A stretch of DNA of 64,000 nt from Saccostrea echinata. Taxonomy: Eukaryota. The DNA is taken from assembly GCF_033153115.1 (NCBI RefSeq), contig NW_026889803.1:43090001-43154000 (forward strand), written 5' to 3'. Within the stretch, counting starts at the first letter, position 1; each line of letters opens with the position of its first letter. Below the pieces are notes generated by a model. The model made no database searches, was not told where the DNA came from, and saw nothing but the letters and a program-made list of their open reading frames with translations. Shown here in pieces: positions 22,501-43,500 of this stretch. Both the position numbers and the translations under genes were made by a program.

Positions 22501-25500
22501 TGTTGAGTAATTGTCATGTACACCAAAGGTGAGGGGAGATAAACTTTTTAAATGTGGTGTGGGTTCCTACATGGGTTCTTATGGAGGAAATAAAGTGCTT
22601 CAAATATTAGATTAAATCCTCAAGTTCGTAAGACTATATATAGTAATGGATGTATCAGTACAGAGTGCATTTTGTGTAAGCCTGCTTTACCATACTGTCC
22701 AGCTGTGAGGTTTGGACTGGTCTCTGTCGCCCTCCTGGTAATAACTGGGTATGTGTCACCTCTACAGAGAAACTGGGGAACCAGCTAACATATCTTGACC
22801 CTGTCAATGAAATTTTTTTAATTTCTTACTGACATCATTATATACAAAACAAATATAAATTTCATACAAGTTTCACAGGAAAGTCTTTCACAATAAAATG
22901 TTTTCTGTGTATAAGAAAATGCATTTTAATGGTTTGTTGGTACTGATTACTAGCTGTTAAGTGTTAAGATACACCATGTGTGTAGCATTCTTTTTCCTCA
23001 GATGTAGTTGGTTTAAGCAGTTGACATATAGTTGCTCAAAAAAGCATCAATTCTCATTTTTACCCTATTCTATCTGATTTTATTTACATTTTGATATACA
23101 GTATGTAATAAACTAAATTGAACATAAATCTATAAATTTAAATATGAAAAAATACCATCAAAATGGAAGAAATGATTGGTGAATTGGTTCTGTGGCTGTT
23201 GTTGAGGGGGTTGGGGTGGTGCAGCACCACGCTCATCTAGGACATTAAGATTGGGGTTCACCTGTGGTCCCTCATTGAGGGACATTCTGCAGGTGGGACA
23301 GGAGGTGTCTTGTTCCAACCATGACCTCAGACAGGAACTGAAAATAATTTTAGATCCTGAATCAGTAATAGGTCCTATATCAGTGATTATTGGAAAATAT
23401 CGATTTGTAACCTTAATAAATGTAGATTATTTAAGAGAAACATTTCTGCTTAATGATTAAATGATTGTGAATTAAGAAATTTTAAATGACCATCTAGTTC
23501 AATCTTAAAAGACTATATAACTTTTCGCACTTTAGAAGTGTAAAATTTAGACAAGAGAATTTGCTGAAACCATAAATTCCCTCCCCCCTCCTCTCCCACC
23601 CTTACCCAACAAGCCAGTGAAGTACATTAATAATTAAAGTTTTTACAAAATTACTATGCTGAAACCCAACAAAGAAAAAAAATTAGGCTTAAAAATCTTA
23701 TCCCTTGCCTTGTACACAGATAAACATAAATAATGTACATTAATAGTCTGACTGTATGTAAGGTAATGTGATATGTCAGGAGATCACAACTACTTGAGAG
23801 CTGTTTTAACATATGTATAAATATTGAGGTTTGAAGACTGAGAAGGTCACATATTTTATTAATATATACATACTGCAGTGGGAATTCTGGCTAAATACCT
23901 CTGGAACTCTGACCATCATTTATAATTCAGTAATTAACCAATGTAGGACGCAATTCTCCATATTGACTTTGATATTATATGGTCATTGATATTATATAAA
24001 ATATTCTGTAGCCAGACAGATCAAGATTAAAATGAAATGACCACTATATATATCCAAGCATAGAAACATGGCCATTTACAGGCATGTAGTAGCATTTTTT
24101 GAAGGGGGGGGGGGGGGCTGCCAGAAAAATATTTGATTTTGTTAGTGTTACCTTGAAAATCTTTCACAAGCACAAAAAAGGGGGGGGGGGGGCGTTTTCC
24201 AACCCTCACCCTATTTTATGGGTTGAATGTTGGTGTGGATGTAAGTTTTCCAACTTTTTACATTTTAAGACCATCTGGTAAACAATTCAATTAATAGACA
24301 ATGAATAAAACATATCAATTTAACAGATGCCATACAAGAAAATTTGCTCAAATCATAAATTACCCCAAGCCACTGATTTACAGTCTTTTAAAGTAATTAA
24401 TTTGAAACTCACAATAAAGCAATTAAAGGCTTACTAAAAGGAAAGTTTTTATGCCTTAAGCTACATAAGTAATGTCCTGGGTAATCTAATTACGGATATT
24501 TTTGTAATTAAATTGGTAGTGTAACCTTAATTGACATGTTATGCTAACTATCAGATCACACTCAAGGGAGAAACTCCTAACAAGCTGCAGGCTACCTGTA
24601 GCATATAAATATAAGAGGTCATAGGGTAACATATGTTATTTATATACTGCAGCAGGAAAACTGACCTACATGATCAGGAACTCTGACCATATATATCTGT
24701 GCAGTACGTAACAGCCATCTCCACTTACTTTCACAGAAATCTGCTACCTGTGTTCACTACTGAGCTTGGAGTCTGGACTAACAACTTTGAGGTATATGCA
24801 CTTTTCATTACAGTAGTAATTATAATTAATGTTTATCAATGTTGGATCTGTAATCTTTTTCTTCTTCCGCTTTTACTTATCTTTGTGTGTGGGTGTGGGT
24901 GTGAGGGAGTTGGGGGGGGGGGGGGGTATTTGCATGTACTTAGTCTATTTTAATAGTATATAAACTTTATATATTAAGTATATGTTAAGTATATGTATGT
25001 TCAGCAAGAAAGAGTTTGTCAGAACATTAACTAGCTGTTACTGTATATCTAAAGAATATGTACAGCAGTTATTAAAAACCTTATTGGCTTGATTAGAATG
25101 TGTAGTTGTAAAATAATGAATTACTGATGTTTCATGTAACAAAAGCTTTCTAAATTTGGAAATTTTGCATAAAATTTTAATAGACTCCAGCTATTTAAGA
25201 CTTTTACTTTTATATGCTCCTATATTTCTAACATTAAAAACTAATGAGAATTTTTTAACAGATTCATATTTTCTATGCTGAGGATTAAGAATCTTGTAGG
25301 ACTGGAACTCGGTCTTGATTTACCTGTTATATGCCAACACTCAATGGAAATTAAAATGTTAAAAAAAATGCTTCTTTCCAGAAAGAGTAACCAGCTAAAA
25401 GTAAAGAGATGGAAGAACTTACCAGAGGAGGTAACAGAAATACATCCCAGGAATCTGGCAGAAATCCAGAGGACATTATCGGTGAAGCATTGGAGAATCT

Positions 25501-28500
25501 TTTATCACTAGCCAAAATGTTACAGGAGAAAACTTCACCTCAAAAGTCTTCCCCCACAAAACCAAATCAGACAGTTTCAGCAGAGAGCTATCGAAGTATT
25601 CCGCAGCAGCAAATACAAGGAAAAACCAGCCAAACAGTGTCTAGAGATGTTTCCCCTGCAGCAAGGCCTGTAGGGAGAATATCTAAGACACAGACTCCAT
25701 CACCCAAAAAGAGCTCCACCCAGCGAAATCAGACCAAAGGTACACTCTATCCATGCCTAACCTGCTGGAAACATGGCATCCAACCGTCCAGCTTATGTGT
25801 TCATAACCAAACTGAGGGGATTGGTATGTCAACTCCATCAAAAAGGATTGCTCTTGTTTTCACAAATCATGTATTTTGTATAAAACATCTTTATATCACT
25901 CTACAAACTACAGTGTATATGACTGCTTTCCCTTAATTGTCATCAATTATGGTCATAAGTTAAATGCTACAAAGTTTACCAGCAGTGTTTGAAACTCACC
26001 GTAAATTAAGCTAGACTGCTAATGAAAGATGTCAGCCCTGCAAAAAATCTGCTAGCCTGAGAAATAATTGTCTAAATTTGTTTTTTGCAATAATGTGAAG
26101 AGGGTCAGATCATAAAAACTTTGATCTCAAATCTATAGGCTGACGAATTCTACCTTTTTGTTTGTAACACTTTGCTACCAATATCATTAGTTGATTTGGG
26201 AGAGATTAAACAAATTGGTGAATTGTAATTAATGGGAAATTTGAACAAGTCCAGCTGGGCATTAATAGGTGCAAATCTGTTAGCCCGCGGCAAAATTTGT
26301 GCGTCTCGGGCGGTCAGGCACACGGTTATTTCAAACACTGTTTACCAGTCATTCGTACCATGACATTTTAATTAGAGGATAATGACACTATAAAATTTTT
26401 ATAGTGTCATTATCCTCTAATTTTCCCATTTAGGTATTTTATTCATAGATATAGCATAACTAAATAAGATGATACTTTTTTTCAAAAAAACTATTCTTAC
26501 ATCATTTTATGAAAGCAGCTTACAAAGTTTTATCTGTTTTCCTCACTTAATTTTTACAACTCAGTTATCAAACACAACACATTTATTAAGACAGTGTACT
26601 GTTTATTAGTTGAATGAATAATTTTTCACAAATTTTAACAATTCTTAGCTGTAACAGCTAAAAAAAGGTTTGACGTCAATTCTCATCCAGAGTTGTCATT
26701 CTTTTCTCTCGCACACTTCTGACAAAATCTATGATTTTACAAGATTCTTGCAAAGCATACATTTAATACTTCAAAGAAATTTACTTTTATGTTTAAATGA
26801 ATTTCTTTAATAATGTACATACCGGTAATATCCAAGAGATAAAAAAGTCTTTGAAATAATTAAATTCTAGCTATATAGATATCTCATTTTAACTACCGTA
26901 TACTCGCATGAAATACAAGTATTTACATATTTCAATAATTTTATTTTTATCTTAAGTGTGCATTACTTATTTTTTTTAATGATTTAAAATTAAACATTGG
27001 CATCATTTAAAAAAAAAAATACTTAAACCAGGTTAAAACATTGATTTGAAATTGTAAGCTGGTTCTTGCAAAAAGTTGACCCGCATTTAAGTCAGTACTA
27101 TAGCAAATCCCTCCAAAATAACCTTGAAAATTACAACTGACTTATAGGGGAGTATACATGGTATATACAGTATGTGCACCATATTTTAAGTGTAATGTGC
27201 TCCATTATTTCATAATTCAAGTTCAATATAAATTTAGGCTCCAGATTTGAGACTATGTGACTGAAAAGAGCAACAACTTTGGACATAAAGCTTTGTTTGA
27301 AGTCCTGTAGACCTACATCTAAATTGATGAAAAGAAAAAGACTAGCTATGAATGATAGACTCATAAAAAATTAGAAAATGTTAATAGGCTAAAAGAGCAA
27401 CAAACTTTGGTGGGACATTTTGAGTAAGAGTTCCATTGATAAAATAAGGAATGAATGTTTCAAAGGCATGTGACCCCCTCCTTTCCTTATCTTTTAAACA
27501 GAATTATTTGGTTGTCAGAGCTAACTCTGTAGGAATAAAAAAAGGAGAAAAGAAAACTATACGACAGTTTCTCATTAATTGACTACATTTCCCATTAACA
27601 GACATGAATGGACATAAAGATCAGCAGTAAAGAACACTTGACATGTTTATGGCAGTTGGGTAACCTTTGACTTTTACTCCTCTGATCTGACAACCTTTAA
27701 GAAAGATTTGTTTGCTATTCCTATCCAGTGAGTATAGATAGAGTGATGACAACATAAGGATTTTATGTCCTCGAAAGATGGCAATACGTGGCATCTCGAT
27801 TTCCTCACAGTTATCTAACTTCTGTTGCTCTTTTGCAGCAGAGTCGAGGAAGCTCTAAATCTCGCATGATAACCAGGGCATACAAAATTGTTTACAATAG
27901 TGACAATCAAATGATTTGAACAATCAGTATGCCGAAAGTTACAATGTATTGCCATGGGTTGAACTCCCAATTAGTAGGTTGTCTAATTATGAATGTTTAG
28001 AATATTTTATCAGTTTCCAAAGGTAACCATTTTCAGAAAGAAATGATTGAATTTAATTAAAAGAGTCCACTTAGTGAAAGTATCATAAAAAAATGTAACA
28101 CACGGGGATTAGCTCCTCTCAAATTTTACTAGAATGGTTCACCGAAGGTTCAGCAAGATATTTCGCTTTTTGTATTTTTTCCTTATCTGTCCTTATAAAA
28201 TCCACAATGATCGATCTTGCATTGTATTCAAAAGCACATTGCCCCCAGCCAACAGACGTTCCTACCTCCACCGCAAAAGAGTTCCATTAAGTTAAGTAAC
28301 TGCGATATCAAGTATTCACATCTCATTGTGACATTTGACCTTTGACCTAACAACCTTTTATTCACCAATCTGCATATATGAAAAGATGAGGATTGGACAT
28401 AAGTCTCCCAAATGATTTCATAATCAAGATCATTAGAATCTTTGACAAATAAGACAAGAAGCATTGCACCTTTGACCTCAGAAAACCTTTAGGGTTCATG

Positions 28501-31500
28501 AGCAAGTCATAAACAATATTGGCAAATGTAAAGTATAAAAGAATTCAATTTTTTTACTATGATTAAATGTCATACATGATAATTCACCTTCCTTTCTTGG
28601 AGGAAAAAATGGTGAAAGTATGCATTCCATTTCAACATGAATACAAAATCCATAATGAGCAAAATCCTTTACTAGTGTGTATTTATTTTAATATATTCAG
28701 AAACACAAAATATGGTGTGGTTTAAATGTAATAAATTACATTTTGACAGTTAACAGCTCAAAATTTCAGTTTCATTCAAATAAGTATACACATGGTATTC
28801 CAAAATCCATTTAAGAGGGAATGTCATTCAAATATACCTGACAAACCCAAGACAAATTTTTTGTTTATGCTAAAAACAATTTGTTGAGTTTCTAAAAGTA
28901 TATATGTCATCCTGAACAAAGTCGAGTGACATATGATTATTGTTCTACCTAATTTTGTCCTGCAGATGGCTTGAGCAATATTGTTTGAATGAATAGCACA
29001 GTAATGATAATAACAAAGTGCATGCAACATTTAAAATTTTCAAAATGACTGCCATGGAGAAAGGACAGTTCTGGGTGACATACAGTATTTTTGGTAAAAA
29101 CAAATTTTCTAGTTAATTTAGGCTCTTTTGAGGATATGTATGAGTTAAAATTAAGTCAACAAGTCAATACTCTTAAAATTGTCTGTGACACCTGTGCAAT
29201 TTGATTCAATTTGAATTCCGACCTTTATTTTCATTTCTACTTTACTGTTTTCTATGTTTTAGAACTGTGTAATCCAAAACCCAGTCTATTTTGACACAAA
29301 ATATGTGTCCCATTGTATGTCAGATTAGACAGGTTTAACTGTATTTTAAACTCCATGTACATGTAACACATGAATTATTATAATTTCAAAGATAGTCTGA
29401 ACTTTTGCTATACATGACATATTGTATCTGCATTACATCTAACTCCCATTTAGTAACATGAATGCTGTATATTACCTATCAGAACAAGTGTAAGCATTGG
29501 AAATGTTGGGTAAAGAGCTTGGTTTACTTAATGCAAAAAAGGTCCTGTCTATGAACCAATCAAATGTTACCATAGGTGATTTTTCATTTTGGGATTAAAA
29601 AAAGAATTAATGCTTTCATTTCTCGTTAAAAAACTTGTGAAACTCTAGGTATTGGATAATTAGCTTTATGAATTGCCATGTTGTTGAATTTTACAAAAAA
29701 TTGTTAAATATGGATACATTAAAAAAAGAATTATATGCACACCACTCAGTAAAAAAAATATATATATAAATAGAAAAGCTTATTTTGTAAACTCCAGTTA
29801 CACTTCTGTCATAATGTACTTATATTTCTTAGATTTGAGATTAATTGTGCTGCATTGGAAATAATGAAAAACGCAGCTTTAATTAAATATTGTCCATTTT
29901 AGAAAAAAAAGTGAAAATTCGTAGCATCAAAATACATTTACTGGTTAGAAAATTTTGTTATTTGAAATAGACATGTATTCACCATGTACGTGTCCAAAAG
30001 TTATTTCTAGCATTAAATTTTCAGTGCATTACAGGACCAAAGAAAGATTTTTGTGAACCTTGCTCTTTCACCAAACTAAATTGATGCACACTTGTTTTTT
30101 TATTTAAGAGGTTATAGGCTTATCAGTTACACCTGAAAGAAATTACTACAACAGGAATATTTTCCTATTTATGCAGACATTTTTTTTGTTGAAATTAACG
30201 AAAAGAAGTTTTTGTACATATTTTTTAAAAAATGTCTCAGTTGATGTTTAATACCCTTGAATTATTATGACTATTTGAATTTTATATGATATAAATTATA
30301 TGTATCAATTTTAAACCATATTTGATATATATGTACTACATGTACAGTTGAACTTTGTTATCTCAAACTTCAATATCTCTCTACTACCAAAGGTACATCA
30401 AAATGTGTTAAAATCCCCAACCACTTTTTATGGCATCAAGCAGAGCTCAAACATCATCTAGCCAGCATCCCATCAAAGGGCCACCAGAAGTTATGCAACC
30501 AAAGGTGTCAGTTGATGCATTCACGAAAGAAAATAGCAATATATCAATTTCTTCAAAAATGCTCAAATTTAAAAAGAACTTTTGAAGTTGTTTTTCATGT
30601 TCGATGTCATTGACGCCTTTCAGGCTTTTGATTCTTACTGTATTTTAATCTTAATATTTCAAATCATCAGATATCTCAGTATTTTTTTCTGGATCTTATT
30701 GGGTTTGAGATAACAAGGTTTGACTGTATATCTAAGATACTGAATGGTTTAGGCAGCATGTTGAACTATTTGTTAAACTATGCAACATTTATAAATATTT
30801 CCTATTTTTTCCTTTTTAGATCACCAAAGTAGAACGGAGGATCAAGAGCGAATGAAGACTTATTATTCAACAAACCAACAAATAATATCAAACCCTACAG
30901 CTTACAAGAGAAACAGACTCAATGAAACTGTCAACAAATATTCTCACCAGAGAGTTCACAGTCACCCTTATAATAGTGCCCCATCAGTACCAAAGGCAAC
31001 CAATGTGACTGCAAGTGCCTCACGAAACAGAGATAAGAATGTTACAAGGAAATTCAATGTGTCACAAACAAATGATTATTCACAGTTTGGGAGGAACAGA
31101 TCTTTGGCAGGACAAAATCCTTGTGCGATATCAGCTGCCAATGACAAACTTAATGCCACTGTCAATCAATCAGAAATGAATGGTGGCAGAAATGTGTCAA
31201 ATTTAAACAATTCTCATTTAAATCTTAGCTCTGTAAATCAATCACAGGCAGGTATGGTTGATTCCAGGTTAGATATCAAGTCTAAATCTGAATCACTTCG
31301 GGTTCACCCTGGAAGCTCTGGACACAACCTCTGTAACATTAGTCATGGTACATCATCATTTGATACTACTCCCTCACATAACTTACAAACAATAAACTCA
31401 CAGAAATTACCCTCCGAAAAACAAATGCACAAATTAGATAGACAGAAGCAACAACAAACACATAGTCAGGCTCATTCAAAAACAAAACAGAATAAGCAAT

Positions 31501-34500
31501 GCAGCAAATTGTTGCAAAACGAGAAATATACAAAAACTACAACACAATTTGAAGCTAACACCAGCATCTCACAACATACTAAACACAGCTTGAATAGGGA
31601 AAACAAACATGAAAAGTCACATAAATTGAATACAAATGTAAGTGGTTTCACATCCAGTGCAAAAATGAATCAAGAAACTTCTGCACCAGGAAAACTTAAA
31701 TCTAGTGGTAGTGCTAAAAATGTAGAAGGTAGGAAAAGGTCTGAAAGTGCTCCAAAGTCAAGTGAAGATTTCAAGAGTAGTGCTCGATACCCACCTGGCA
31801 TTGAAAAAACTTTACAAGTGATTGCCAATAATATAAAGAACAATTTAGAACAGAATAAAGAGACAAAGACACAATCCTTACCAAAGAAAAGGTCATCTTC
31901 AAAATCTAAAAAAGATTCCAAGCCTCATGAAAGAAAATCTGTAACCAATTTGACTGGAGATGAAATATCAGATTCTGCCTCTACAATCCTTCAAAATAAG
32001 CTGAACAGTCATACCCAAGAAAGGAAGCAAAGCCAAAATACTGCTAAGGATCCAATAAATACTTGCTTATCTAAAGATACATCTAAGGGAGGAGTAGAGG
32101 AACAGAAAATTGACAGGAGTGTGCAAAGAAAAAAGTCAGAAGTAGCATTTGAGCCTTTAAAACGTTTTTCCTTTGGAGATTCAAACACCCCTAAACAAAA
32201 ACACCCGACAAAGACAAACATCAGAATTTCATTAGAAGATCTTGTGTCTTGTACTGAAGATCAATCAAAACAGGCTGGTGAAAAAGATCATCATCAAAGT
32301 GTTTCATTAGGGAATGAAGAAGTAACAAATCAAAATCATTCTGCTGAAAATCAGGGGCTAGATGAAGATCTGCCTATGCTTGTCAGGAGCAGGAGGCACT
32401 CGGCAAAACAATGTACAAGTCACCATGATGCAAACACTTCTACAACTGAGAACCCCTTGACGAATAGGAATATCTCTCCAAAATCTAAAGACTCTGATAA
32501 TAATGGACACAAGGAAGTACATAAAAGTGTCAATGAAATTCCAAAACTTCAAGATATCTCAACAACTGAATATAAAGATGCTAAAGAGACCACAGCCAAA
32601 AGTGAACCCATTCAACAGACAGTCACAGTAAAAAATGACAATTCAGTTGAAAGTGAAGTCAAGATATCTGGAGGAAAAGCTATTAATTTTGAGAATTCAA
32701 CTGAAGTCAACCAAGCAAATGCTCATTGTAAATTTCTCAACTTCCTAACAAGACCAGTGATCATAAAAAATAGGACAAACAAATCGATTCCTGATGATAA
32801 GAATGCTTCAAAATCCAACAAGCAGTTTAGCTCTCCAGTAAACTATCAAAATGATGCTGTTACAACAGAAACAGAAAATATGGACATAGAACAAAGCATA
32901 AGACCACAGAGCAATAAGACATCAGAGGTCAAATCAATGGAGAAAGATGATTCAAATATAAAAAGTAAATTGAAAACAGAAAATGACAGATTCTCCACAA
33001 AGGACTCGGAAAAGCAAGATACAGCTCAGCCATTGATGTTAACAAACATTAAGGAAGAACCAGTGTGGGAAATAGACAACAGTATACTAACTGGATCTTC
33101 AAACATTCAAATGAATGAGAACAGCAGTGACAAGGTGAACAATAAAGAAGACGGCAATCGGAACATCTGGGAAGATCTACAACTCCATGATGAAGCAACC
33201 TCCAGTGGACTATTCAAGACAACAGCACTGAACAATTCACATACTCAGACAAGCCACTCAACAAAAGAAAGTCTGCAGGGAAAAGAATCACAGAAAACTC
33301 ATTCAAATGGAATGGGAAAGACATGGCAGCAACTTATGAAACCAAGTGAAGCTTTAAACATTGAAATACCAAAAAACCCTGAACTGATGCCCATGAGAAT
33401 CAAAACTGAGCCAGTATCTCCTCCTGTTCCCATTGATAATCATGATTCATCCCTCATGACTGAAAAACCTAAGCAACTAAGCTATAACAGACAACAAAAT
33501 CAAAACATAAAAGTAAAAGAAGAGCAAATTGATGATGCTGATAATAACAAAGTTGACAAGACGACAAAAAAACAACAAACTAGAAACTCAAATCCATTAC
33601 CAAATCAACAAAACAAAGACCAACAAAATAAAAAAAGAAATGTTCAAGACATTCATGTAAAAAAAGAACCAGTAGAGGATGCATTTCCAACTCCAGAGGT
33701 CACTGAGCAAAATGCTATTTCAAAGAAACCTGCTGAGATCCTAACAGAAATAGAAAAGTCCAGTTCTTTACATGTAAAACAAGAGAAGAAAAATACAACA
33801 GAAACAACAACAACACCCACTGTTGATAGTTCAGAATTTTTGCATCAAAAGGATCCTTCTTCCAAAGTATCAACTTGTCTGGAAACTAGAGCCGCTAGTG
33901 TAACAGAATGTGATGAAGAAAGAGAAAATGTCAACAGTCTACGAACGATTGAAAATTTGAATGAACAATCAAAAGTGAAAGACAAAAATAATTGCTTTGA
34001 TGCTTCCTATGATCCAAAAAGACCCAAAACAAAGATTTCTCCAATAAAATTCATATCAGATTCACATGAAAAAGAAACTTGTGAGCAAACAGAAGTAAAT
34101 TTTGTAAACCAGAAGGGGTACATCAGCACTGGCAAAACAAAAGTAATTAAAAAAGGAAATAGAACTTCAACTTATCAAAACACAGAAAATTCTTTGCCAA
34201 TATCCATTCCATCTGAACAAGCACTCCATACTACTAGAAAAAAGACTGCCAGTAAAAGAATTGTGACTGTAGGAGACACATTTCTACAACAAAAAAATTC
34301 ATCAACTTCTTCAGACAAAAACACCTTGGCTATGTCCAAACAAGACAAAAACAAACCTGACACTTCTAGAGAAGCAGAAATTTCAACATCCAAAGACACT
34401 CTTGGTAAAAACCCTGTTCATTCAGATAAAGAGGTAAAGAAATTTGTCTCAAGTGTTGTAGCTGTTGTTAGTGTGAAAGAGAAGATAATTGAAAGACAGA

Positions 34501-37500
34501 AAAAGGTAGTAAGACAGACAAGAGAACAATCAGTTGCACGCCAGATAGTTAGAAAGAGAATCACAGCAACACCAGCAAGACCCCTCAAGACACAATCTAA
34601 GTTAACTCAGTCAAGAAAATCTATGAAGGAAAGCATCAAGCCATCCACAAAAACTGATGAGGGTAAAAATTATCAGTCACAAAATTCATCAACAAAACAG
34701 AAGGAAAAGCCAGTGTCACAAAATGCTAGATCAGAGACAACTGGAACTAGCAAAGAAAAGGACACAACACTAAGAAAAACATCAACAAAACTGATGGAGG
34801 AAAAAGAAAATCAGAGAACAACACAAAAGACCAATTCAACTCGTAGGAGGTGGAGTCCCAGAAATAATGACATGGAATCGAGGAATGTTGATTGTACTTG
34901 TTTACGATGTAGACAACAAAGATACAGAGAAAAATCTCCAGAAAATAGATTTATTAGTCAATACAAACCAAATTACAGGTATGAGTCAGTAATCATTGAC
35001 AAATACAGATCAAGAGACACAAGATCGGATAGGAGTTACTATTATGACAGTGAATATAGTGCACCTAGTTTTTATGAGAGGTATCCTAGGTACAGTTCTC
35101 CTCCTATGTCACCAGGCAGTTGGAATTCAAGCTATGATTCCTACAGGAGAGGTAGATCTCCAATTTACAGATCTCCATCACCAGACTACAGATGGAGGTC
35201 ACGAAGAGGTAGATCTATATCACCTTCTTTTAGAGGGGAACTGCCTCCAAGAAGGTCCAGATCACCACCCTATAGAACAAGATCACCTTTTCAAAGGCAT
35301 CGATCACCTTTTCACAGGTCAAGATCTCCAATGCACAGGTCAAGATCTCCTCTGCCCAGATCAAGATCACCAATTCACAGGTCAAGGTCTCCTATGACCA
35401 GATCAAGGTCACCAGAGTACAGAAAATACAGATCTCCAAAGAACGATACTCTGTCAAAACGGATCACATCACCTCCACATTCAAACTCCTCCACGGGTTC
35501 TCTTCTTGAGAATTTTGCAAAAGGTACAGCAGAAGAGTTCAATGACAATTCACAGCTTTTTTCAACATCAGTAAAGAAATTTGGACATGAATCATTCATG
35601 CCAAAAGAACTACCAAAACCAAAACCTCAAAAACAGGTAATGAAACACAACAAACTTGAAAAGCCATTGAGAAATAATGCCTCAGTCACAGAGAAAATGG
35701 AGGAATTTGCAGAAAAACCAACTATGACAGAAGTTAGTTCAGCATTCAAAAAATGTCACTCTAGTTCTGCAGACTTGATCAAGAACAATCAAATTCAGCT
35801 GAAAACAACCCAAGTTAAAAAGGCAGAACATGTAAGACAATCTAATCTGATTCAAATTGATACAACTTCATTTCAAGTTAGTATAGAAACTGTTGCATCA
35901 TTAAAACCAAACAAACCCATTCAAATGCCACCCATATCAAGTGTAAAGAAGGCTGCAAAGTTAAAGAAATCGAATGACAACATGAAAAAAATGTTAGTAG
36001 GAAAAAAACAGAGAACTCCTGGTAAAACAATGACACATGAAGTGAGTGAAAAAAATATTGAGGGAACATCAGACACAAAGTCAAAGAACTTGAAAAAAAT
36101 TATAAAAGATGGAAAGAAGAAACCAATTGAGGTGGAAGAACCAAGAATGAATGAGGTCGCAGAGCAGAAAGGTGGGAATGCAGGGGAACAGAATGTAATT
36201 GATGAGAAACAGCAATCAAAAGATCAAACAAAAACTAAAGGAAGTAAAATTGAAAATGGACATACTGACAAAGTAAAGGAAGCAGTTACACAAAACAATG
36301 AGAAAACTCTGAAGCAGATGGAACTTGAAACCAAACCTAGTGCAAAGAAGGCAGTGAAAAACCTTGTACCATGTGAACAGAATGAAAAGCCTATTGAAAG
36401 GGGGAAGTCATCAGAAAAAGAAGAAAAGCAAATGGCAACAGATGACATAATGAATATTACCAAGGAAAAGTCAATAGAAAAAGAAGAAAAGCCAATGGCA
36501 ACAGACAACATAATGAATATTACCAAGAAGTCAACAGAAAAAGAAGAAAAGCAAATGGCAACAGACAACATAATGAATATTACCAAAGAAAAATCATCAA
36601 AAAAAGAAGATAAACAAATTGCAACAGACAACATAATGAATACAACCAAAGAGAAGTTATCAGAAAAAGAAGAAAAGCAAATGACAACAAACAACACAAT
36701 GGTTAAATGCAAAACAAAGGAAACAGATGAGGCAGATGAATCGAAACTCAGTGCATCAGAGGATGTTCAAACAGTAGTAGAAAGCATTGAAAATGCAAAG
36801 CTTAAGAAGACGAGACAAGAGTTACACCCAACAGAACTACCAAGTAATCAACAACCTGAGAAAGAGACAAGAAAAGCTCCCTCCAAAGATGACACTACAG
36901 AGGTCAAACCAAAAGAAAAACCAAGTAGACCAATCAGCCCTTCTACCAGTGAGTATGTTGATATCAACCTAAAGAACATGACACACATATATATTTGTGA
37001 TGGCCGACAAGTGTGCAATGCATTTAACATGTCAAGTTTTACTGGCATTGACTGTCCAGGAACATGTAACCAGCTCCATCTTTCTCTGCCTATCTACAAC
37101 CCATCTGCAAAGATCAATATGAGTATTTCACAAACAGAAGAGTTGGCAGATGTACTGAAAGACTCAAAGGGAAATGTGTGCTTCTTCAATTTGTCACAGA
37201 AAATGATATGTAACAACTTCAACTCAGCAGAGGGCTGCATGAACAGAAACTGTTTTATGATTCACACATCATTTTATAAAATTTTCAATGCATTTTTCAT
37301 CAGAAAACTGAAAGGGAGAAAATTCCCAAAGTATGTGAAACAGCAGTGTTCTTTGGCAAAACCAGATAAAACAAAACTCCCTGTTAATAGTGATCACAAG
37401 TGTAAGGTTAGACTGCATCCAGAAGAAAAAGTAACAGAGCCTCATGATCATACAAAAGACACTCCCATTCAAGTAAAGGATTGGAAAAAAGAAAAAGGTT

Positions 37501-40500
37501 GTGAAATAAATGTTAAAAAAATCTCTGACAATGAAAATGAGGCATCTAACAATAAAAGTTCTGTAAAGAAATTTCAAAACACCGAATCAATAACAGATCA
37601 GAAAAGTGTGGTGCAAAACCAAATCAGTGGCACAAGTTCAAAGCAACAAACTCCTGATGACAGAAATGACAACAACCAAAAAGATACATCAAACAAGGTA
37701 CAGGGCACATTTTCTGATTCTGTGGTAAATAAATCAGAACAGACAATAAAAATTGACACAAGTGAAAGAAAAGAGACAAACCAGCCTAAAAATGCTGATG
37801 ATCTTGTCACCGTTATCAATGTGAAATCACCTTGGAGGGTTTGCAGATATTTCAATACTTCCAGAGGATGTAGAAGGTGGAATTGTTCATTTCATCATGT
37901 ACAAAATCAGCCATCTAGGTCTGTAAAGAGCAATGTAAAATCCCATCTCAAAAATTCAACTTCATCTGACAACCTATTCACAAGAAAAGGAAGAAGTCCA
38001 CAAAAAGATTTACCAATATCTACAGAGAAACAAAATCATCCACCAGCAAAGAAAATGAAGAAGACCAAATCATTAGAAATAAGCAAAGAAAGTGAAAAGC
38101 AAACAAAGGGGCAGACTTGTGGTAAAATAATTGGGCAAATAGTGAAACAGGAAACAATTGCTTCCAAAAACACTGAAAATGTAGTGATGAAAACCAATGC
38201 TAATGCTGAATCAAACAAAGCTCGTGAAATAGAAAATCAGAAAACGGGAAATCATTCAACTGAAATTGATAAGAAACCATCAGACACATCAAAACTACCA
38301 GAAAGCAATACAATAAAAGGGCTCAACTCTGGCTCAAGTGAGATAGCTACCAGTTTAAAAGACATCAGTGGGAATAACAATCAGGAAAAAACTCTTTCAG
38401 CTTCTCAAAATGCAGCATCCTCTAACTATCCATCAAACAGAAAAAGAAAACCAGAGATGTGTTTTCAACACAGGGCAGCAAAAATGCCTAGGCAAAGCAG
38501 GAAATCTAACTGGCAAGCACTACTGACTAGACAACAAAGATTTCTGACCAGAAATCCTTCATCTACTTACCATCACAACTACTACAATTCTGAACCGCCA
38601 GACTGGAGATTAGAACAGACAGAAAACTATAGGTTACCAGACAGGAGATTAGAACATTTACAGAACTATAGGGAGACAGTGGAACATTCCGAAAACTATA
38701 GGGAGCCAGACTGGAGATTTGAAAATTCGCAAAACTATAGGGAGTCAGTAGAACATTCACAAATCTATAGGGGACAGAGGTTGTGTCCTGATTTTAACAC
38801 CCAGTGGGGATGTCCCCTCCCATATTGGGAATGTCCATACATTCATGACTATGCTGAAGACATTCACTTCTCTTAACATACCGGTACTATTTAAGATTCT
38901 CTGCATTAATGTGTACCGTATTTGGCTGAATATAATACGCACTTTTTTCCCAAAATTATTTTCTGTGAGAAAGGGGTGCGTATTTTACACCACAATGGGA
39001 TTTTGATAGGTTTTTCTTTCATGTGAAACACGACTATCATACGCTCATACCGTAGTATTACCTAGTAACTTATGCAATTTCTTGCTGTTTATCGCCGTAT
39101 TTAAAACTTCGTAAAGTTATTGTTGGAATGTAGGCTTGCTAAAAATGTTATATTTATAACCTTTTGATAGTTAAATTAAATTTAAAAGCAAGTTAAAATT
39201 AATTTGAGCAGCATGTTCATCGTCTCCGTGTAGGCCGCCATTAACGATGTTATTTATAGATGTTCACCCATTCCTTTGCCACGTGCTTCCGTAATCATAG
39301 TACACATGTACCTAATCAGTCAGACACTCGGTCAAAAAAAGTAATGTCTTTTTTTAATGAAATACAATAAAATAAAAATTTTATTTTAGGTTTTATATAA
39401 CTCAGTGAAAATTCATTTCAACATAACACCCCTCTATACGTCCCAATGGAAGCCAATGTTGTGACACACGTGCGCTTGTCACTTGATGATTACCACTCAA
39501 CACCCCTCCAGGCAATTAAATTGTTTACCGACTCCAAAGCATTGTTTTTACAGTTAGAGCACTGATTATTTACAGCCCTTATTAATGGCTTTGATTATTT
39601 TCTTTGTTAAAAATCGGGGGTTGGTTTATGATCTTTCGTATGTATAAGCCTGTGTTGATTACGACACATTAAAGTTAAACGCTTGTTAAATGTAATTTTA
39701 CTTTATCTTATATCGGCCTCGTGTTAAAATGATTGAGAGTTAAAAAAGGAAATGTGAAGTATGTTGAAACTTGTGTTATCATTTACTCGTGCTCTGTAGA
39801 AAATAAGATATCCACAAAGATTACCTCGATGTATGAAGACATATAATCCCACCTTTGTACATCATTTTTCACAACTTTGGAGGTGTGTTGATAACTACAC
39901 TTTACACGCTTGTTAAATTTTGATTTTAATTTTATAACATCAGTTATTTATTTAATTAATTAATTTCAAGTTCAAAAGAAGAAAATCGTAGTCTATGAAT
40001 ACTTTGATGTTGCAATATCGCTTGCCCTGTTAAATTTACATAATTTTCAACATGATTACCTTAAACTAAAAATAAATACGACAACTGTTAAACTTGCAAC
40101 AATATCTCGTGCTTTGTTGAAATAAAATTATTTCCACAAAGAATAGTTAGAATACGGCGACGTATAATTTCAATATCACCGTATGCTAAAAAAAAAATTA
40201 ATAATAAACTCTGTTAATACTTTAATGCAACATTATCTCGTGCTTTGTTAAAATAAATAATTTCCTCCAGATTGCCGCGATATAGAAAGTCAAGATTAAG
40301 AAATAAAAACGCATTTGAATAAAATATCGTGTTCTGTAAATTTTCGGCACTTTATCTCCGCGCCAATTTTCATAGCAAATTACCGCAATTTTCAAAAGTT
40401 CAGAACATCGCTTGGTCAAATTTTCTGCTGCGTATAATACAACCGAACTGCGTTTTTTCCCCAGTTTCAGGCTCAAAAAGGGGGGTGCGTATTTTACACC

Positions 40501-43500
40501 AATGCGTATTATATTTGGCCAAATACGGTAAAAAGAAAAAAAAAAAGAAAGAAAATTAAAGCTTTGTCAATTTACCTATAATTGTTTTTTAATATGTTGT
40601 TTTTTTCTGCATCAAGATATTGAAAGTAAAACAAATTGTTAAAATCAAAATATACTGAAAACTTTTTTTTAATGAAGTAAACATTTCATTACCTTATAGA
40701 AATGGTTGAAGGGTGTGAACATATAAATAAATTTTACATGTTATACAATTATGGACTTCAGTGTAGGTTGATAAGTGGTTCTAAAGACCCATGTCAAGTG
40801 ATATTGACCAAAGATACAGAAAGTGATAGTGACTGAGCTTGCGACCTTATTTTCTCTGTCTGAGGTCAATATCACTTGACACAGGTCCTTACAACCACAT
40901 ATTGACCATTCCCTGAAGTCCATAATAGTTATATTATATAATCACTCAAAGGGAATAATCTGACACAGTCCCTTCTGAACAGACTTGACTGTCATCACGT
41001 CACAATGGTAAAAACATGCTTCTTATATTATGACGTAACGTTTTATGTAACTTTGGTGCAGCCAAATGGTGAGCAGTGCGATTTCATAATCCGTGGAGGC
41101 ACTTTCATGTCAGTATCACAAAAGGAGGAATTTCACATGATGTCCTTTCAGCCAATGAAAATTAGGAAAATAATACTCTTATATGGCAAATCGCTATTCT
41201 CTGGGCACTAATACATGTAATTGATCTATCACTTGTGTCTAATTCCAACCTTCATTCTTATAAAAAATACTACAAACAGAAAAAAACTATATACACTTAT
41301 TCAGTCAAATATTCGACACAACTGATTAACCATGGGTATCTAATGATGGTAAACAGTGCACACTATGTTCACTTATGCATAATGGCTCATCAGCATTGAA
41401 TAAATACACCAAAATTTTATACTGATAAAGGTTATGAATACTCCATTCCATGTTCCTATAGTAACAAGCTGATTATGTAAACACTTGATGGTAGTGATGG
41501 GAAATCAGAAAAAAATGATTTTATCATAATCCATTATCAGTAATAATCGGCTGCGCATAATCGATTAATAATCAATTATAATCGAGTTTTTATATTTAAT
41601 AAAATAAATATAAAAAGAGTTATATTTATTCAGATTTCAGTTTATACTTTTAATACCAAAAAAAAAATTATTTTAATTATTTATTAAATTCATGAATGTT
41701 TATTAATTCTTTCATTTCAATAAAGTGAAAAATAAGAATTATTTCTTTACTTTTTAAAAAAAATGTCATTGAAATATACTGAATGGGAATTTATTTTTAT
41801 AAAAAAAATCTCATGAAATGTATTGAATGGAAATATTACTGTTATTAGTCCCACCTTGCATAACATGTATTTATTTCTTGGAATTACAAGTTTTTTTTTT
41901 AAAAAAAAATAGTTATCCAGTATTTGCACTTGTATTCCTCATTAAAGTTAAGTTTACAGACCGTCTGTACTGTTAATGTTTTCTTTTACATAGTAAAACC
42001 AGGTAATTTTGTCTGTTTTCTGTTATTAGTCTGACCCTATATTCAATCATGGCAGTAAAAATATCAACAAGGCATGGAAACTTTCGATGTGTCGAACATT
42101 CATCACTACTTTAAAACTCTTTGCACATGAATTTGGTAATAAAATTAAAGTATTAAAATATTAATTTAATAAAATTAAAGTATTAAAATATTAATTTTTG
42201 TCAGTGATGTTGGCGACATTTATTTCATAATCGATTAGTATAGCATCGAAGAGCACCAAACAACAGACAATCGATCGTCGGCGACAATCGGCCCATCACT
42301 ACTTGATGGAGTGGAGTGTCTTTTTATATTTAAACATCCACATGCACAAAGAAAACAAGGTCTTATACAAATGTAGATGAGCAAACAAATAGTGGATGAA
42401 GTCAGTATATACTATGGGCAGATAACATAAAGGCACTTGTGCCTGTAGAGGGAAGATTTGGCTTTGACTTCTGATTAGGTCAGTCATTAACATGTACATG
42501 TAGTATATTGGGTATGTACTTCCTTTATTGTTGTTACGTCAAAAAGTTTAAAATGAAACCCAGAAAGTTTTTTTTTATTAGAAGCTTGAATAATGCAGTA
42601 CAATTTAATTATCACAAGTGTTTCTCTTCACTTTCATTTTTTGAGCAACAACAGTTTTTTTTTTACTATTGTGACTTCAACCAGGTATTGCATTTTCTGC
42701 TGTGTTCCTGAAAATGTTTCATGAAGACTTGGATATAAATGTGAGAATGTGACAATTTGTTTTCAAATTTGACAGCCCCAAAATCCTGGATAAAAAGGTG
42801 CCAGACAAAGTGGTCCCTTACTGTCTACGGTATAGGCAAAACAAAAATGATATGTTACATACTTATGAAACAAATGTCCACACGGCAGTTTTCTTGCCCC
42901 CTCCATTCTCTCCCAGCATACAGCACAGTTGTCATTGTGACCCTGCAATTCTTCTTTGGTAGCCATTGGAAATCTGAAAAGTTTTGTGATGAATGAAACG
43001 GAATTCAAGTTTTGAACATTCAATACCTCATGATATGATAAGTATGACTTGAGAATACTGAATGATGGAAATGACAAAGCATCATGGTAACCTAACAGAC
43101 AAGTCTGAGGAAAGGACAATGAGGACATAGGGACAAACCCCACATTACTACTCTCCAAAATCTGGATTTGCAATGCAATAATCATGTAAGAGGAGACAAA
43201 ATATGGAGATATTTATTTATACTTTTCTTCCTTTAAAAACTTTTTCAACTTTTTAGTGTTCTCTCACTTCTTGATTTTCATCCAGTGCCTAGGCAGTTTA
43301 CATGCATTTCAAATATATTTTTGTAGTGTATACCTTGCTTCCATATTTTGTACAACTCTTCTGTAATTCTTATGACGATTGATCCTCCTTTTGAATTCAT
43401 AAAATAGATACCTCAGCTGCATACAAATTACAAGACTGGCCATGCTCAAGAAGATATTTCCCCACAACTACAAAATTAAACACACAAGAAATTATGTCAA

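What the first reader, a model, noticed from the sequence alone, without database searches (positions are those of the whole stretch)
25409..38876. Giant uncharacterised gene hidden antisense inside the intron that splits the AMFR RING finger
Seen: AMFR intron 7 (23338-42862, 19.5 kb, three times longer than any other AMFR intron) falls between ...CGHLFHN and SCLRSW... of the RING-H2. It holds a phase-compatible two-exon CDS of ~2823 aa with an 8057-nt exon free of stops and transposons, while the surrounding DNA is TE-dense. I recognise no RT, integrase, transposase, recombinase or viral motifs. Architecture: long S/T/K/E/N/Q-rich disordered region, SUMO-consensus cluster, basic region, Tyr/Arg-rich RS domain, charged minisatellite, then four dispersed CCCH fingers. 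I cannot assign it to a known family. Inference: a lineage-restricted nuclear RNA-binding or condensate scaffold; convergent transcription could also modulate completion of the AMFR RING-encoding mRNA.
Basis: partly seen in the sequence, partly recalled or inferred. Interest (0 to 1): 0.85.

Follow-up and report, generated by a model that had tools for sequence, protein, structure and literature searches.

The report
Oyster-only giant spermatocyte zinc-finger gene
A real, single-copy, two-coding-exon gene for a 2823-residue, mostly disordered protein with an RS domain and three conserved CCCH-type zinc fingers sits antisense inside the long intron that splits the AMFR RING finger of an oyster; relatives turned up only in oysters, where the Pacific oyster copy is a reported spermatocyte marker, so it is a fast-evolving orphan gene of an ordinary kind, not a new type of system.

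Summary
A stop-free 8057-nt exon (30820-38876, +) plus a 415-nt coding stretch (25409-25823) give a phase-compatible 2823-codon CDS. It lies inside a 19.5-kb intron between the two halves of an AMFR/gp78 RING-H2 on the minus strand.

- **Copy number:** the big exon is unique in the 923-Mb genome. The DNA between the two exons carries interspersed repeats.
- **Relatives:** both exons are homologous to one uncharacterised protein of Magallana gigas (LOC105329656), M. angulata and Crassostrea virginica. Overall identity is only 26-34%, but 60-68% over a 125-residue two-finger block.
- **Transcription:** contigs from two studies start matching exactly at an AG acceptor at 25380, so an upstream 5'UTR exon is spliced on. 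No contig bridging 25823 to 30820 was seen.
- **Expression in a relative:** a published snRNA-seq atlas lists the M. gigas ortholog as a pachytene-spermatocyte marker.
- **Fingers:** three CCCH-like fingers keep their ligands across oysters. The fourth does not.
- **Family:** no Pfam family, solved structure or non-oyster relative was found. AlphaFold gave no usable model.

Best reading: a rapidly evolving, male-germline, nuclear SR-related CCCH protein. Its effect on AMFR is pure speculation. This scan's other note on the same DNA (s1-814374) covers the fingers only.

The parts
25380..25823 (+). Exon carrying the start codon (ATG at 25409; CDS 25409-25823, 138 codons + 1 base). An AG acceptor lies at 25379/25380 and the donor G|GTATGT at 25823/25824.
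   Evidence: Contigs of runs X1 and X3 (two studies) begin to match exactly at 25380 after 188-200 unlike letters, so an upstream exon is spliced on. Homologous to the N-terminus of the M. gigas protein, aa 14-150, E 5e-15. The start position coincides in M. angulata and C. virginica.
25824..30819 (+). Intron of the nested gene (GT...AG, polypyrimidine tract before 30820), rich in repeats.
   Evidence: Sequence. Own-genome DNA search gave 3206 repeat candidates, including a ~535-bp repeat at 27783-28317 with at least 40 copies at 77-83%. No contig bridging the junction was listed.
30820..38876 (+). Giant coding exon (8057 nt) ending at the TAA stop at 38874-38876. The 3'UTR was not mapped.
   Evidence: Unique in the genome. 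32-45% of its sampled words are held by five small runs. The C-terminal tail motif and the stop position are shared with Magallana.
31785..32744 (+). Conserved short islands in the disordered N-terminal half: RYPPGIEKTLQ (31785-31826), DEDLP.LVRSRR.S (32355-32402) and CKFLNF (32727-32744).
   Evidence: Invariant columns in the five-sequence alignment A1. Coordinates.
33048..33791 (+). Cluster of SUMO-consensus sites. IKTEPVSP (33399-33422) fits the phosphorylation-dependent type psi-K-x-E-x-x-S-P.
   Evidence: Motif scan. K851, E853, P854, V855, S856, K889, E891, K937 and E939 are invariant across oysters. That these are modified is inference.
34518..34631 (+). Conserved basic segment (TREQSVARQIV... 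ATPAR).
   Evidence: The 40-residue windows here have the highest conservation score outside the finger block (0.63).
34917..35555 (+). Tyr/Arg-rich region leading into an RS domain built of RSRSP-type heptads (21-nt tandem period at 35278-35413).
   Evidence: R+S reaches 52% in a 100-aa window, with 19 RS/SR dipeptides in aa 1401-1530. Tandem repeat. An RS run is also present in the M. gigas protein.
36405..36701 (+). 63-nt minisatellite, 4.8 copies, encoding a charged 21-aa unit.
36948..37316 (+). Conserved ~125-aa two-finger block. Finger 1 is C-x12-C-x3-C-x3-H (37014-37079), finger 2 is C-x8-C-x4-C-x3-H (37209-37265), followed by a conserved segment ending in RKLK.
   Evidence: 59-68% identity to oyster orthologs, with all eight ligands invariant. 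Pfam gave only sub-threshold matches.
37842..37898 (+). Finger 3, C-x8-C-x4-C-x3-H.
   Evidence: Ligands conserved in Magallana and C. virginica. phmmer matches down to E 3.9e-11 to proteins that are true Pfam zf-CCCH members. Its own Pfam score is 12.7 bits against a 20.5-bit cut-off.
38598..38777 (+). Tandem 30/39/69-nt repeats (..ENYRE.. units), absent from the aligned Magallana tail.
38784..38873 (+). C-terminal tail. A C-x8-C-x6-C-x3-H pattern occurs in this genome only (38784-38846), followed by the conserved DY.ED..F end.
   Evidence: Magallana has Y, Y, R, Y at the four ligand positions and C. virginica lacks the segment.
42863..42963 (-). AMFR exon encoding the first half of the RING-H2 (ends ...CGHLFH + 2 bases).
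   Evidence: Best PDB match is human AMFR 4lad_B residues 19-51, E 7e-13.
23130..23337 (-). AMFR exon encoding the second half of the RING-H2 (SCLRSW.EQDTSCPTCR...).
   Evidence: Best PDB match is human AMFR 4lad_B residues 53-75, E 1.8e-9.

Best explanation
This is an independent, single-copy protein-coding gene nested antisense in the RING-splitting intron of oyster AMFR.

Gene structure: it has at least one upstream non-coding exon, a start-codon exon (25380-25823) and a giant 8-kb terminal coding exon. Together they encode a 2823-aa protein.

Protein: about three quarters is a fast-evolving disordered chain dotted with short conserved motifs. These include invariant SUMO-consensus sites, a basic segment, a KRK-type basic cluster, and an RS domain. 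It ends in three conserved CCCH-type zinc fingers.

Most likely function: a nuclear, SR-related RNA-associated regulator of the male germ line (meiotic spermatocytes). The fingers would contact RNA, the phosphorylatable RS domain would tie it to the splicing/speckle machinery, and SUMO sites would tune its interactions.

What is shown: gene reality, structure, copy number, conservation within oysters, splicing of the 5' exon, and spermatocyte-marker status of the M. gigas ortholog (from a paper).

What is inferred: nuclear location, RNA binding, SUMO and phospho regulation, and the germ-line role in this species.
For: - **Open frame:** P about 6e-92 by chance.
- **Orthologs:** M. gigas, M. angulata and C. 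virginica have orthologs of 1900-2711 aa. Logan contigs of 8.3-8.4 kb encode 2702-2709 aa in a single frame that includes the exon-1 part.
- **Junction:** homology runs to the donor and resumes with HQS.R right after the acceptor.
- **Copy number:** single copy at both protein and DNA level.
- **Transcription:** RNA-type contigs from two studies break exactly at the AG at 25379/80, which is canonical only on the + strand.
- **Coding constraint:** variants in those contigs are 7 synonymous to 6 non-synonymous, a weak sign of constraint.
- **Fingers:** all ligands of fingers 1-3 are invariant, and block identity is 59-68% against 26-34% overall. Finger 3's sequence neighbours are bona fide Pfam zf-CCCH proteins.
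- **RS domain and SUMO sites:** both conserved.
- **Expression:** LOC105329656 is listed as a pachytene-spermatocyte-specific gene, upregulated in stage I male gonad (PMC10987912).
- **Rate:** very fast divergence (33-34% between genera, about 96% between M. gigas alleles) fits a reproductive protein. That link rests on general knowledge.
Against: - No contig spanning 25823 to 30820 was seen in this species. The runs' RNA nature is the tool's guess, although the splice break argues for RNA.
- No finger reaches a Pfam gathering score.
- AlphaFold gave pLDDT 29 and 34, so no fold could be checked.
- No RRM or other RNA-binding domain was found.
- Expression evidence comes from one paper on another genus, from a cluster label based on few markers.
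- CCCH fingers can also bind protein, DNA or poly(ADP-ribose) (own knowledge).
Confidence: 0.6

Rival explanations
1. It is the unrecognisably diverged oyster ortholog of a known metazoan CCCH or SR-related nuclear protein, not a lineage-restricted gene. Candidates are a ZC3H-type protein or a germ-cell CCCH protein such as TOPAZ1. It would then work as that family does.
For: The divergence rate is extreme. Two oyster genera share only 34% identity, so homology beyond the family could be erased. The general architecture (long disordered chain, RS-rich region, CCCH) recurs in several ZC3H proteins (own knowledge). Searches were limited by query length and word sharing. The all-length library did not even return the known oyster orthologs.
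Against: The most conserved block (60-68% within oysters) found nothing outside oysters in three word-indexed searches, one full HMMER scan, Pfam and PDB. Finger spacing and the dispersed layout match no Pfam CCCH family at threshold.
Confidence: 0.2
2. It is a structural scaffold of a nuclear body (SON/SRRM2-like), whose main role is multivalent condensation and not sequence-specific RNA regulation.
For: It combines a giant single exon, about 78% polar or disorder-promoting residues, an RS domain, internal tandem repeats and C-terminal nucleic-acid-type modules. This resembles the SON layout (own knowledge).
Against: No G-patch, DSRM or cwf21 domain was found. There is no localisation data. 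The repeats are not conserved between oysters. Scaffold behaviour cannot be read from sequence.
Confidence: 0.12
3. The gene's main significance is regulatory. Its antisense transcription through the AMFR intron interferes with completion of the AMFR pre-mRNA, and the protein itself is secondary.
For: The two transcription units are convergent and overlapping by position. Nested genes can cause intron retention or premature polyadenylation of the host (PMC3192792, title and abstract).
Against: An 8.5-kb frame kept open across genera, with conserved fingers, shows selection on the protein. No expression data for AMFR were examined. Antisense nested genes are common and mostly neutral for the host (own knowledge).
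Confidence: 0.05
4. It is a domesticated or decaying transposon or viral gene.
For: It lies in repeat-rich intronic DNA, and the strongly A-rich coding strand (AT skew 0.31-0.39) differs from the flanks.
Against: It is single copy, has no RT, integrase, transposase or capsid match, is a spliced two-exon gene with orthologs in three other oyster species, and no terminal repeats were noted.
Confidence: 0.02

Closest known systems
Uncharacterised oyster proteins: M. gigas LOC105329656 (XP_011429290, UniProt K1QIH5 and A0A8W8K537), M. angulata LOC128190588, C. virginica LOC111133269 and LOC111133256
   Same: Orthologs. They share the N-terminus, the order of conserved islands, the RS domain, the two-finger block (59-68% identity), the third finger and, in Magallana, the C-terminal tail.
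   Different: Overall identity is only 26-34%. The repeats differ. The fourth Cys/His pattern exists only in this genome. The C. virginica copies are shorter, and one lacks the finger block. None has been studied. The RefSeq name 'serine-rich adhesin for platelets' looks like a composition artefact.
SR-related CCCH proteins of the splicing and RNA-processing machinery (e.g. U2AF35/ZRSR2, ZC3H13, ZC3H18), from own knowledge
   Same: They combine CCCH-type fingers with an RS or R/S/E-rich low-complexity region, and a nuclear RNA-processing role is expected.
   Different: No sequence relationship was detected. There is no UHM/RRM. The fingers are dispersed at the C-terminus, one has unusual C-x12-C-x3-C-x3-H spacing, and the protein is far longer.
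SON / SRRM2 nuclear-speckle scaffolds, from own knowledge
   Same: A giant single coding exon, a mostly disordered chain, tandem peptide repeats, an RS domain and small nucleic-acid-binding modules at the C-terminal end.
   Different: No G-patch, DSRM or cwf21 domain, no homology, and no localisation data.
Nested antisense intronic genes in animals
   Same: A complete gene sits on the opposite strand inside a long host intron. The host here is AMFR, whose RING halves flank it.
   Different: Nothing unusual beyond the size of the nested gene. Conservation of the nesting in other oysters could not be tested.

Membership tests
CCCH (C3H1) zinc fingers (Pfam PF00642 and its clan) | Three Cys and one His with C-x7-8-C-x4-5-C-x3-H spacing | tested here: met
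   Fingers 2 and 3 are C-x8-C-x4-C-x3-H. Finger 1 is the atypical C-x12-C-x3-C-x3-H, and the fourth pattern is C-x8-C-x6-C-x3-H.
CCCH (C3H1) zinc fingers (Pfam PF00642 and its clan) | Score at or above the Pfam gathering threshold | tested here: not met
   Best scores are 12.7 bits (cut-off 20.5) for finger 3 and 11.8 bits (cut-off 27) for finger 1 against PF21457. The whole protein gave no hit at E <= 1.
CCCH (C3H1) zinc fingers (Pfam PF00642 and its clan) | Metal ligands conserved among orthologs | tested here: met
   All ligands of fingers 1-3 are invariant in the oyster alignment. The fourth pattern fails (Y/Y/R/Y in Magallana).
CCCH (C3H1) zinc fingers (Pfam PF00642 and its clan) | Sequence neighbours are family members | tested here: met
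   For finger 3 only: phmmer hits at E 3.9e-11 to 5e-4 are proteins with above-threshold Pfam zf-CCCH domains.
CCCH (C3H1) zinc fingers (Pfam PF00642 and its clan) | Zinc binding and RNA binding | not testable with these tools
   AlphaFold models were unusable (pLDDT 29 and 34).
SR-related proteins (RS-domain proteins) | A run of alternating Arg-Ser dipeptides | tested here: met
   19 RS/SR dipeptides in aa 1401-1530, R+S up to 52% per 100 aa, and an equivalent run in the M. gigas protein.
Classical SR splicing factors | N-terminal RRM | tested here: not met
   No RRM or any other Pfam domain.
SON / SRRM2 speckle scaffolds | G-patch plus DSRM (SON) or cwf21 (SRRM2) | tested here: not met
   No Pfam hit at E <= 1.
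Transposable element or provirus | Multiple copies, and RT/integrase/transposase domains | tested here: not met
   One copy in 923 Mb by protein and by DNA. No such domain.
AMFR/gp78 (host gene) | RING-H2 most similar to AMFR | tested here: met
   Both half-RING exons best match human AMFR chains (E 7e-13 and 1.8e-9), ahead of synoviolin and RNF4.
AMFR/gp78 (host gene) | CUE domain and a G2BR-type region downstream of the RING | tested here: inconclusive
   Recognised by eye in minus-strand ORFs at 16222-16407 and 12535-12744. Not scored against a profile.
Nested antisense intronic gene | All coding exons inside one host intron, on the opposite strand | tested here: met
   The CDS 25409-38876 (+) lies between minus-strand AMFR exons ending at 23337 and starting at 42863. 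The position of the 5'UTR exon is unknown.
TOPAZ1 (vertebrate germ-cell CCCH protein) | Homology to the TOPAZ1 CCCH and its C-terminal conserved region | not tested
   Recalled from memory as a lead only. No TOPAZ1 sequence was available by reference. The region after the fingers is disordered and unconserved here.

The most novel reading that the evidence does not exclude
The conserved 125-residue block (C-x12-C-x3-C-x3-H, a conserved linker, C-x8-C-x4-C-x3-H, then a conserved segment) is a new two-zinc RNA-binding domain. It would define an oyster-born, positively selected meiotic spermatocyte factor. Its fixed residence antisense in the AMFR RING-splitting intron would couple its germ-line burst of transcription to local shutdown of AMFR.
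Probability: 0.08. Interest if true: 0.6.

Novelty: new member of a known kind. Interest (0 to 1): 0.33.

Why it matters
The finding adds a well-supported gene model to an oyster genome. The gene is a very large, very fast-evolving orphan that is probably specific to male meiosis. Such genes are candidates for reproductive isolation and fertility traits in farmed oysters, and this one offers a clean case for studying how a huge disordered protein keeps a few short motifs and a small zinc module under selection. It does not reveal a new kind of system. Nested antisense genes and SR-related CCCH proteins are both familiar, and relatives of this gene are already modelled (unnamed) in RefSeq.

Tried and rejected
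- **Pfam:** the whole protein gave nothing, and the finger pieces gave only sub-threshold CCCH matches.
- **PDB sequence search of the finger block:** 0 hits at E <= 10.
- **ESM Atlas, twice:** only generic CCCH leads at scores <= 0.82, which is no evidence.
- **The search of protein representatives with aa 2025-2360:** 11 weak hits, all generic CCCH proteins matching finger 3. It failed to return the known oyster orthologs, so its blank says nothing about distribution.
- **AlphaFold2:** the 336-aa and 131-aa finger regions, with 7-8-sequence alignments, gave pLDDT 29 and 34. No fold search was run on such models.
- **The look-up of encoding contigs:** I therefore could not fetch oyster genomic contigs to test whether the ortholog is also nested in AMFR, or to compute dN/dS.
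- **The search for related loci on metagenome contigs:** no relative.
- **Exact look-up:** the window's own ORFs are not in the collection.
- **Rfam on 23000-43000:** nothing.
- **Sigma-70 promoter scan:** irrelevant for a eukaryote and ignored.
- **Alternative donor at 25739|GTACAC:** also phase 1, but rejected because homology to Magallana continues to 25823.
- **TE or viral origin:** rejected.
- **Paper searches:** the neighbouring LOC numbers and other accessions gave nothing.
- **Spliced model:** all searches were done exon by exon, by reference. The joined model was never sent to a search tool. I concatenated the two exons only inside a local script, to check the frame, count residues and scan motifs.

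Full report
**1. The observation**

The window holds a + strand ORF at 30852..38876, 2674 aa from its first ATG. It stays open back to a canonical acceptor (pyrimidine tract, then AG) at 30819/30820. With the window's base composition a stop is expected about every 13 codons. The chance of 2685 stop-free codons is about 6e-92.

An upstream ORF starts at ATG 25409 and meets a donor G|GTATGT at 25823/25824. Donor and acceptor are both phase 1. Together 415 + 8057 nt make 2823 codons plus a stop (the exons were joined only in a local script for this arithmetic).

On the minus strand, the exon ending at 42863 encodes the first half of a RING-H2, and the exon starting at 23337 encodes the second half. 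Their best PDB matches are human AMFR/gp78, chain 4lad_B residues 19-51 and 53-75 (E 7e-13 and 1.8e-9).

Further AMFR exons can be recognised by eye at 22655-22807, 16222-16407 (CUE-like), 13850-14023 and 12535-12744. The other introns I could place are about 6.2 kb or shorter. I did not verify the intron number.

**2. Is it a gene or a mobile element?**

- The finger region, searched as protein, has exactly one place in the 923-Mb assembly.
- The whole 8-kb exon, searched as DNA, also has exactly one place.
- By contrast, the 4.9 kb between the two coding exons gave 3206 first-look repeat candidates. These include a ~535-bp element at 27783-28317 with at least 40 copies at 77-83% identity.
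- Pfam finds no reverse transcriptase, integrase, transposase or any other domain at E <= 1.
- Rfam finds nothing in 23000-43000.

**3. Relatives**

Word-indexed HMMER searches found only oyster proteins. Cluster look-up names them:
- Magallana gigas LOC105329656 (XP_011429290; UniProt K1QIH5 'C3H1-type domain-containing protein' and A0A8W8K537). RefSeq currently auto-names it 'serine-rich adhesin for platelets'.
- M. angulata LOC128190588.
- Crassostrea virginica LOC111133269 and LOC111133256.

Logan contigs of 8.3-8.4 kb encode 2702-2709 aa in one frame. These include the part homologous to exon 1, so in Magallana the two parts are contiguous on intron-less, mRNA-sized contigs.

Exon 1 aligns to residues 14-150 of the M. 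gigas protein (E 5e-15). The Magallana sequence then continues with HQS.R, as the window does immediately after the acceptor. This favours the 25823 donor over the alternative phase-1 donor at 25739. The start codon position coincides in M. angulata and C. virginica.

Pairwise identities:

| Pair | Identity |
|---|---|
| window vs M. gigas | 33% |
| M. gigas vs C. virginica | 34% |
| window vs C. virginica | 26.5% |
| two M. gigas sequences | 96% |

The window's species is thus about as far from Magallana as Crassostrea is. This agrees with other agents' notes that this genome is an oyster (a lead only, and the species was not determined).

The protein evolves very fast. Conservation is confined to short islands and to a finger block.

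**4. Transcription in this species**

Five small runs (33-75 million letters, two studies) hold 32-45% of the sampled words of the 8-kb exon. The tool only guesses that they are RNA.

Laid on 25200-31150, contigs of X1 and X3 (different studies and organism codes) start matching at exactly 25380. That position follows the AG of ttctttccag, and 188-200 letters that do not fit the stretch come before it (table 8). This is the signature of a spliced upstream exon. The AG is canonical only for the + strand.

Contigs also cover 25420-25820 and 30836-31019. No listed contig bridges 25823 to 30820, so that junction rests on phase, signals and homology.

Differences between the X1 contig and the window in exon 1 are 7 synonymous and 6 non-synonymous. 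This is a small sample that mildly favours coding constraint.

**5. Anatomy of the protein** (coordinates)

- About 78% of residues 1-2020 of the big exon are polar or disorder-promoting.
- Invariant islands include RYPPGIEKTLQ (31785), DEDLP.LVRSRR.S (32355), CKFLNF (32727) and a basic segment around TREQSVARQIV (34518).
- Five SUMO-consensus sites lie between 33048 and 33791, and three are invariant. IKTEPVSP (33399-33422) fits the phosphorylation-dependent SUMO motif psi-K-x-E-x-x-S-P (motif definition from my own knowledge).
- A Tyr/Arg-rich stretch leads into an RS domain of RSRSP-type heptads (34917-35555; 21-nt tandem period). The M. gigas protein has one too.
- A 63-nt minisatellite (36405-36701) and C-terminal ENYRE-type repeats (38598-38777) are not conserved.

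The best-conserved part is a ~125-aa block (36948-37316; 59-68% identity). It holds two fingers, C-x12-C-x3-C-x3-H and C-x8-C-x4-C-x3-H, followed by a conserved segment.

A third finger, C-x8-C-x4-C-x3-H (37842-37898), is conserved as well. Its sequence neighbours in a full HMMER scan are proteins with above-threshold Pfam zf-CCCH domains.

The fourth pattern (38784-38846) has Y, Y, R, Y at the ligand positions in Magallana and is missing in C. virginica. It is therefore not a family feature, although the terminal DY.ED..F motif and the stop position are shared.

A conserved KRK cluster (ORF aa 2531-2533) could serve as a nuclear localisation signal (inference).

**6. What family?**

None that I could establish.
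- No finger reaches a Pfam gathering score.
- The PDB sequence search is blank.
- Atlas look-alikes are generic CCCH clusters at non-significant scores.
- The all-length library search did not even recover the oyster orthologs, so it cannot speak to distribution.
- AlphaFold models were unusable (pLDDT 29 and 34), so no fold search was made.
Synteny and dN/dS in other oysters could therefore not be tested.

**7. Function**

The only functional datum is from the literature. A single-nucleus atlas of the Pacific oyster gonad lists 'uncharacterized LOC105329656' among pachytene-spermatocyte-specific genes. It was upregulated in male stage I versus stage 0 (PMC10987912).

I combine this with the RS domain, the conserved CCCH-type fingers, the invariant SUMO sites and the very high evolutionary rate. 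The best-supported reading is a nuclear, SR-related, RNA-associated regulator of male meiotic cells.
- **Shown:** gene reality, structure, single copy, conservation pattern, a spliced 5' exon, and marker status of the ortholog.
- **Inferred:** nuclear location, RNA binding, modification, and the same expression in this species.

Nested genes can interfere with host transcripts in other systems (PMC3192792), but the long conserved frame shows that selection acts on the protein.

**8. Verdict**

The gene is an uncharacterised, apparently oyster-restricted (or too diverged to trace) member of a familiar kind, sitting in a familiar genomic arrangement. Relatives are already modelled in RefSeq and UniProt, and one has been mentioned once in a paper.

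Interest is moderate to low (0.33). The points of real interest are:
- the unclassified two-finger block;
- the extreme evolutionary rate;
- the likely role in spermatogenesis.

Noticed in passing
window 27783-28317 and 25984-26343: Interspersed repeats inside the nested gene's intron. One is a ~535-bp element with at least 40 genomic copies at 77-83% identity. The other is a ~360-bp element with an 88% copy on contig C1. Type not determined.
   Followed up: partly
window 30340-30380 and 30588-30731: Short pieces matched by many different, often deep, contigs in all four runs (summed depth up to 242). Many joints skip about 323-343 bases between ~30364-30380 and ~30698-30709. This looks like an expressed repeat family whose copy here carries an extra ~330-bp insert just upstream of the giant exon's acceptor.
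   Followed up: no
P0005 / P0006 (C. virginica LOC111133269 and LOC111133256): Two loci fall in one 90% cluster. The 1768-aa product lacks the finger block. This could be a recent duplicate, a truncated copy or a haplotig.
   Followed up: no
P0011 (M. gigas XP_011429290.3): RefSeq's current product name 'serine-rich adhesin for platelets' (a bacterial surface protein name) is almost certainly a low-complexity naming artefact. Earlier versions said 'uncharacterized'.
   Followed up: partly
Search of protein representatives library: The 50%-representative library did not return any of the oyster orthologs that the other protein search scores at E 1e-48 to 1e-63. Blanks from that library for animal proteins should not be read as absence.
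   Followed up: no
window 25401 and 25699: The X1 contig has a 10-nt insertion behind 25401 (in the 5'UTR, 8 nt before the ATG) and a 1-nt deletion at 25699 near the contig's end. A second X1 contig lacks the deletion. This is probably allelic variation plus a contig-end error.
   Followed up: no
window 12535-23337, minus strand: Downstream AMFR exons are recognisable by eye: FSVEV-type segment at 22655-22807, CUE-like at 16222-16407, an acidic Ser-rich exon at 13850-14023 and a G2BR-like segment at 12535-12744.
   Followed up: partly
window 32000-38000: The coding strand of the giant exon has a very strong A-over-T excess (AT skew 0.31-0.39, against about 0 in the flanks). This reflects the Lys/Asn/Glu/Ser/Thr-rich codon usage.
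   Followed up: no
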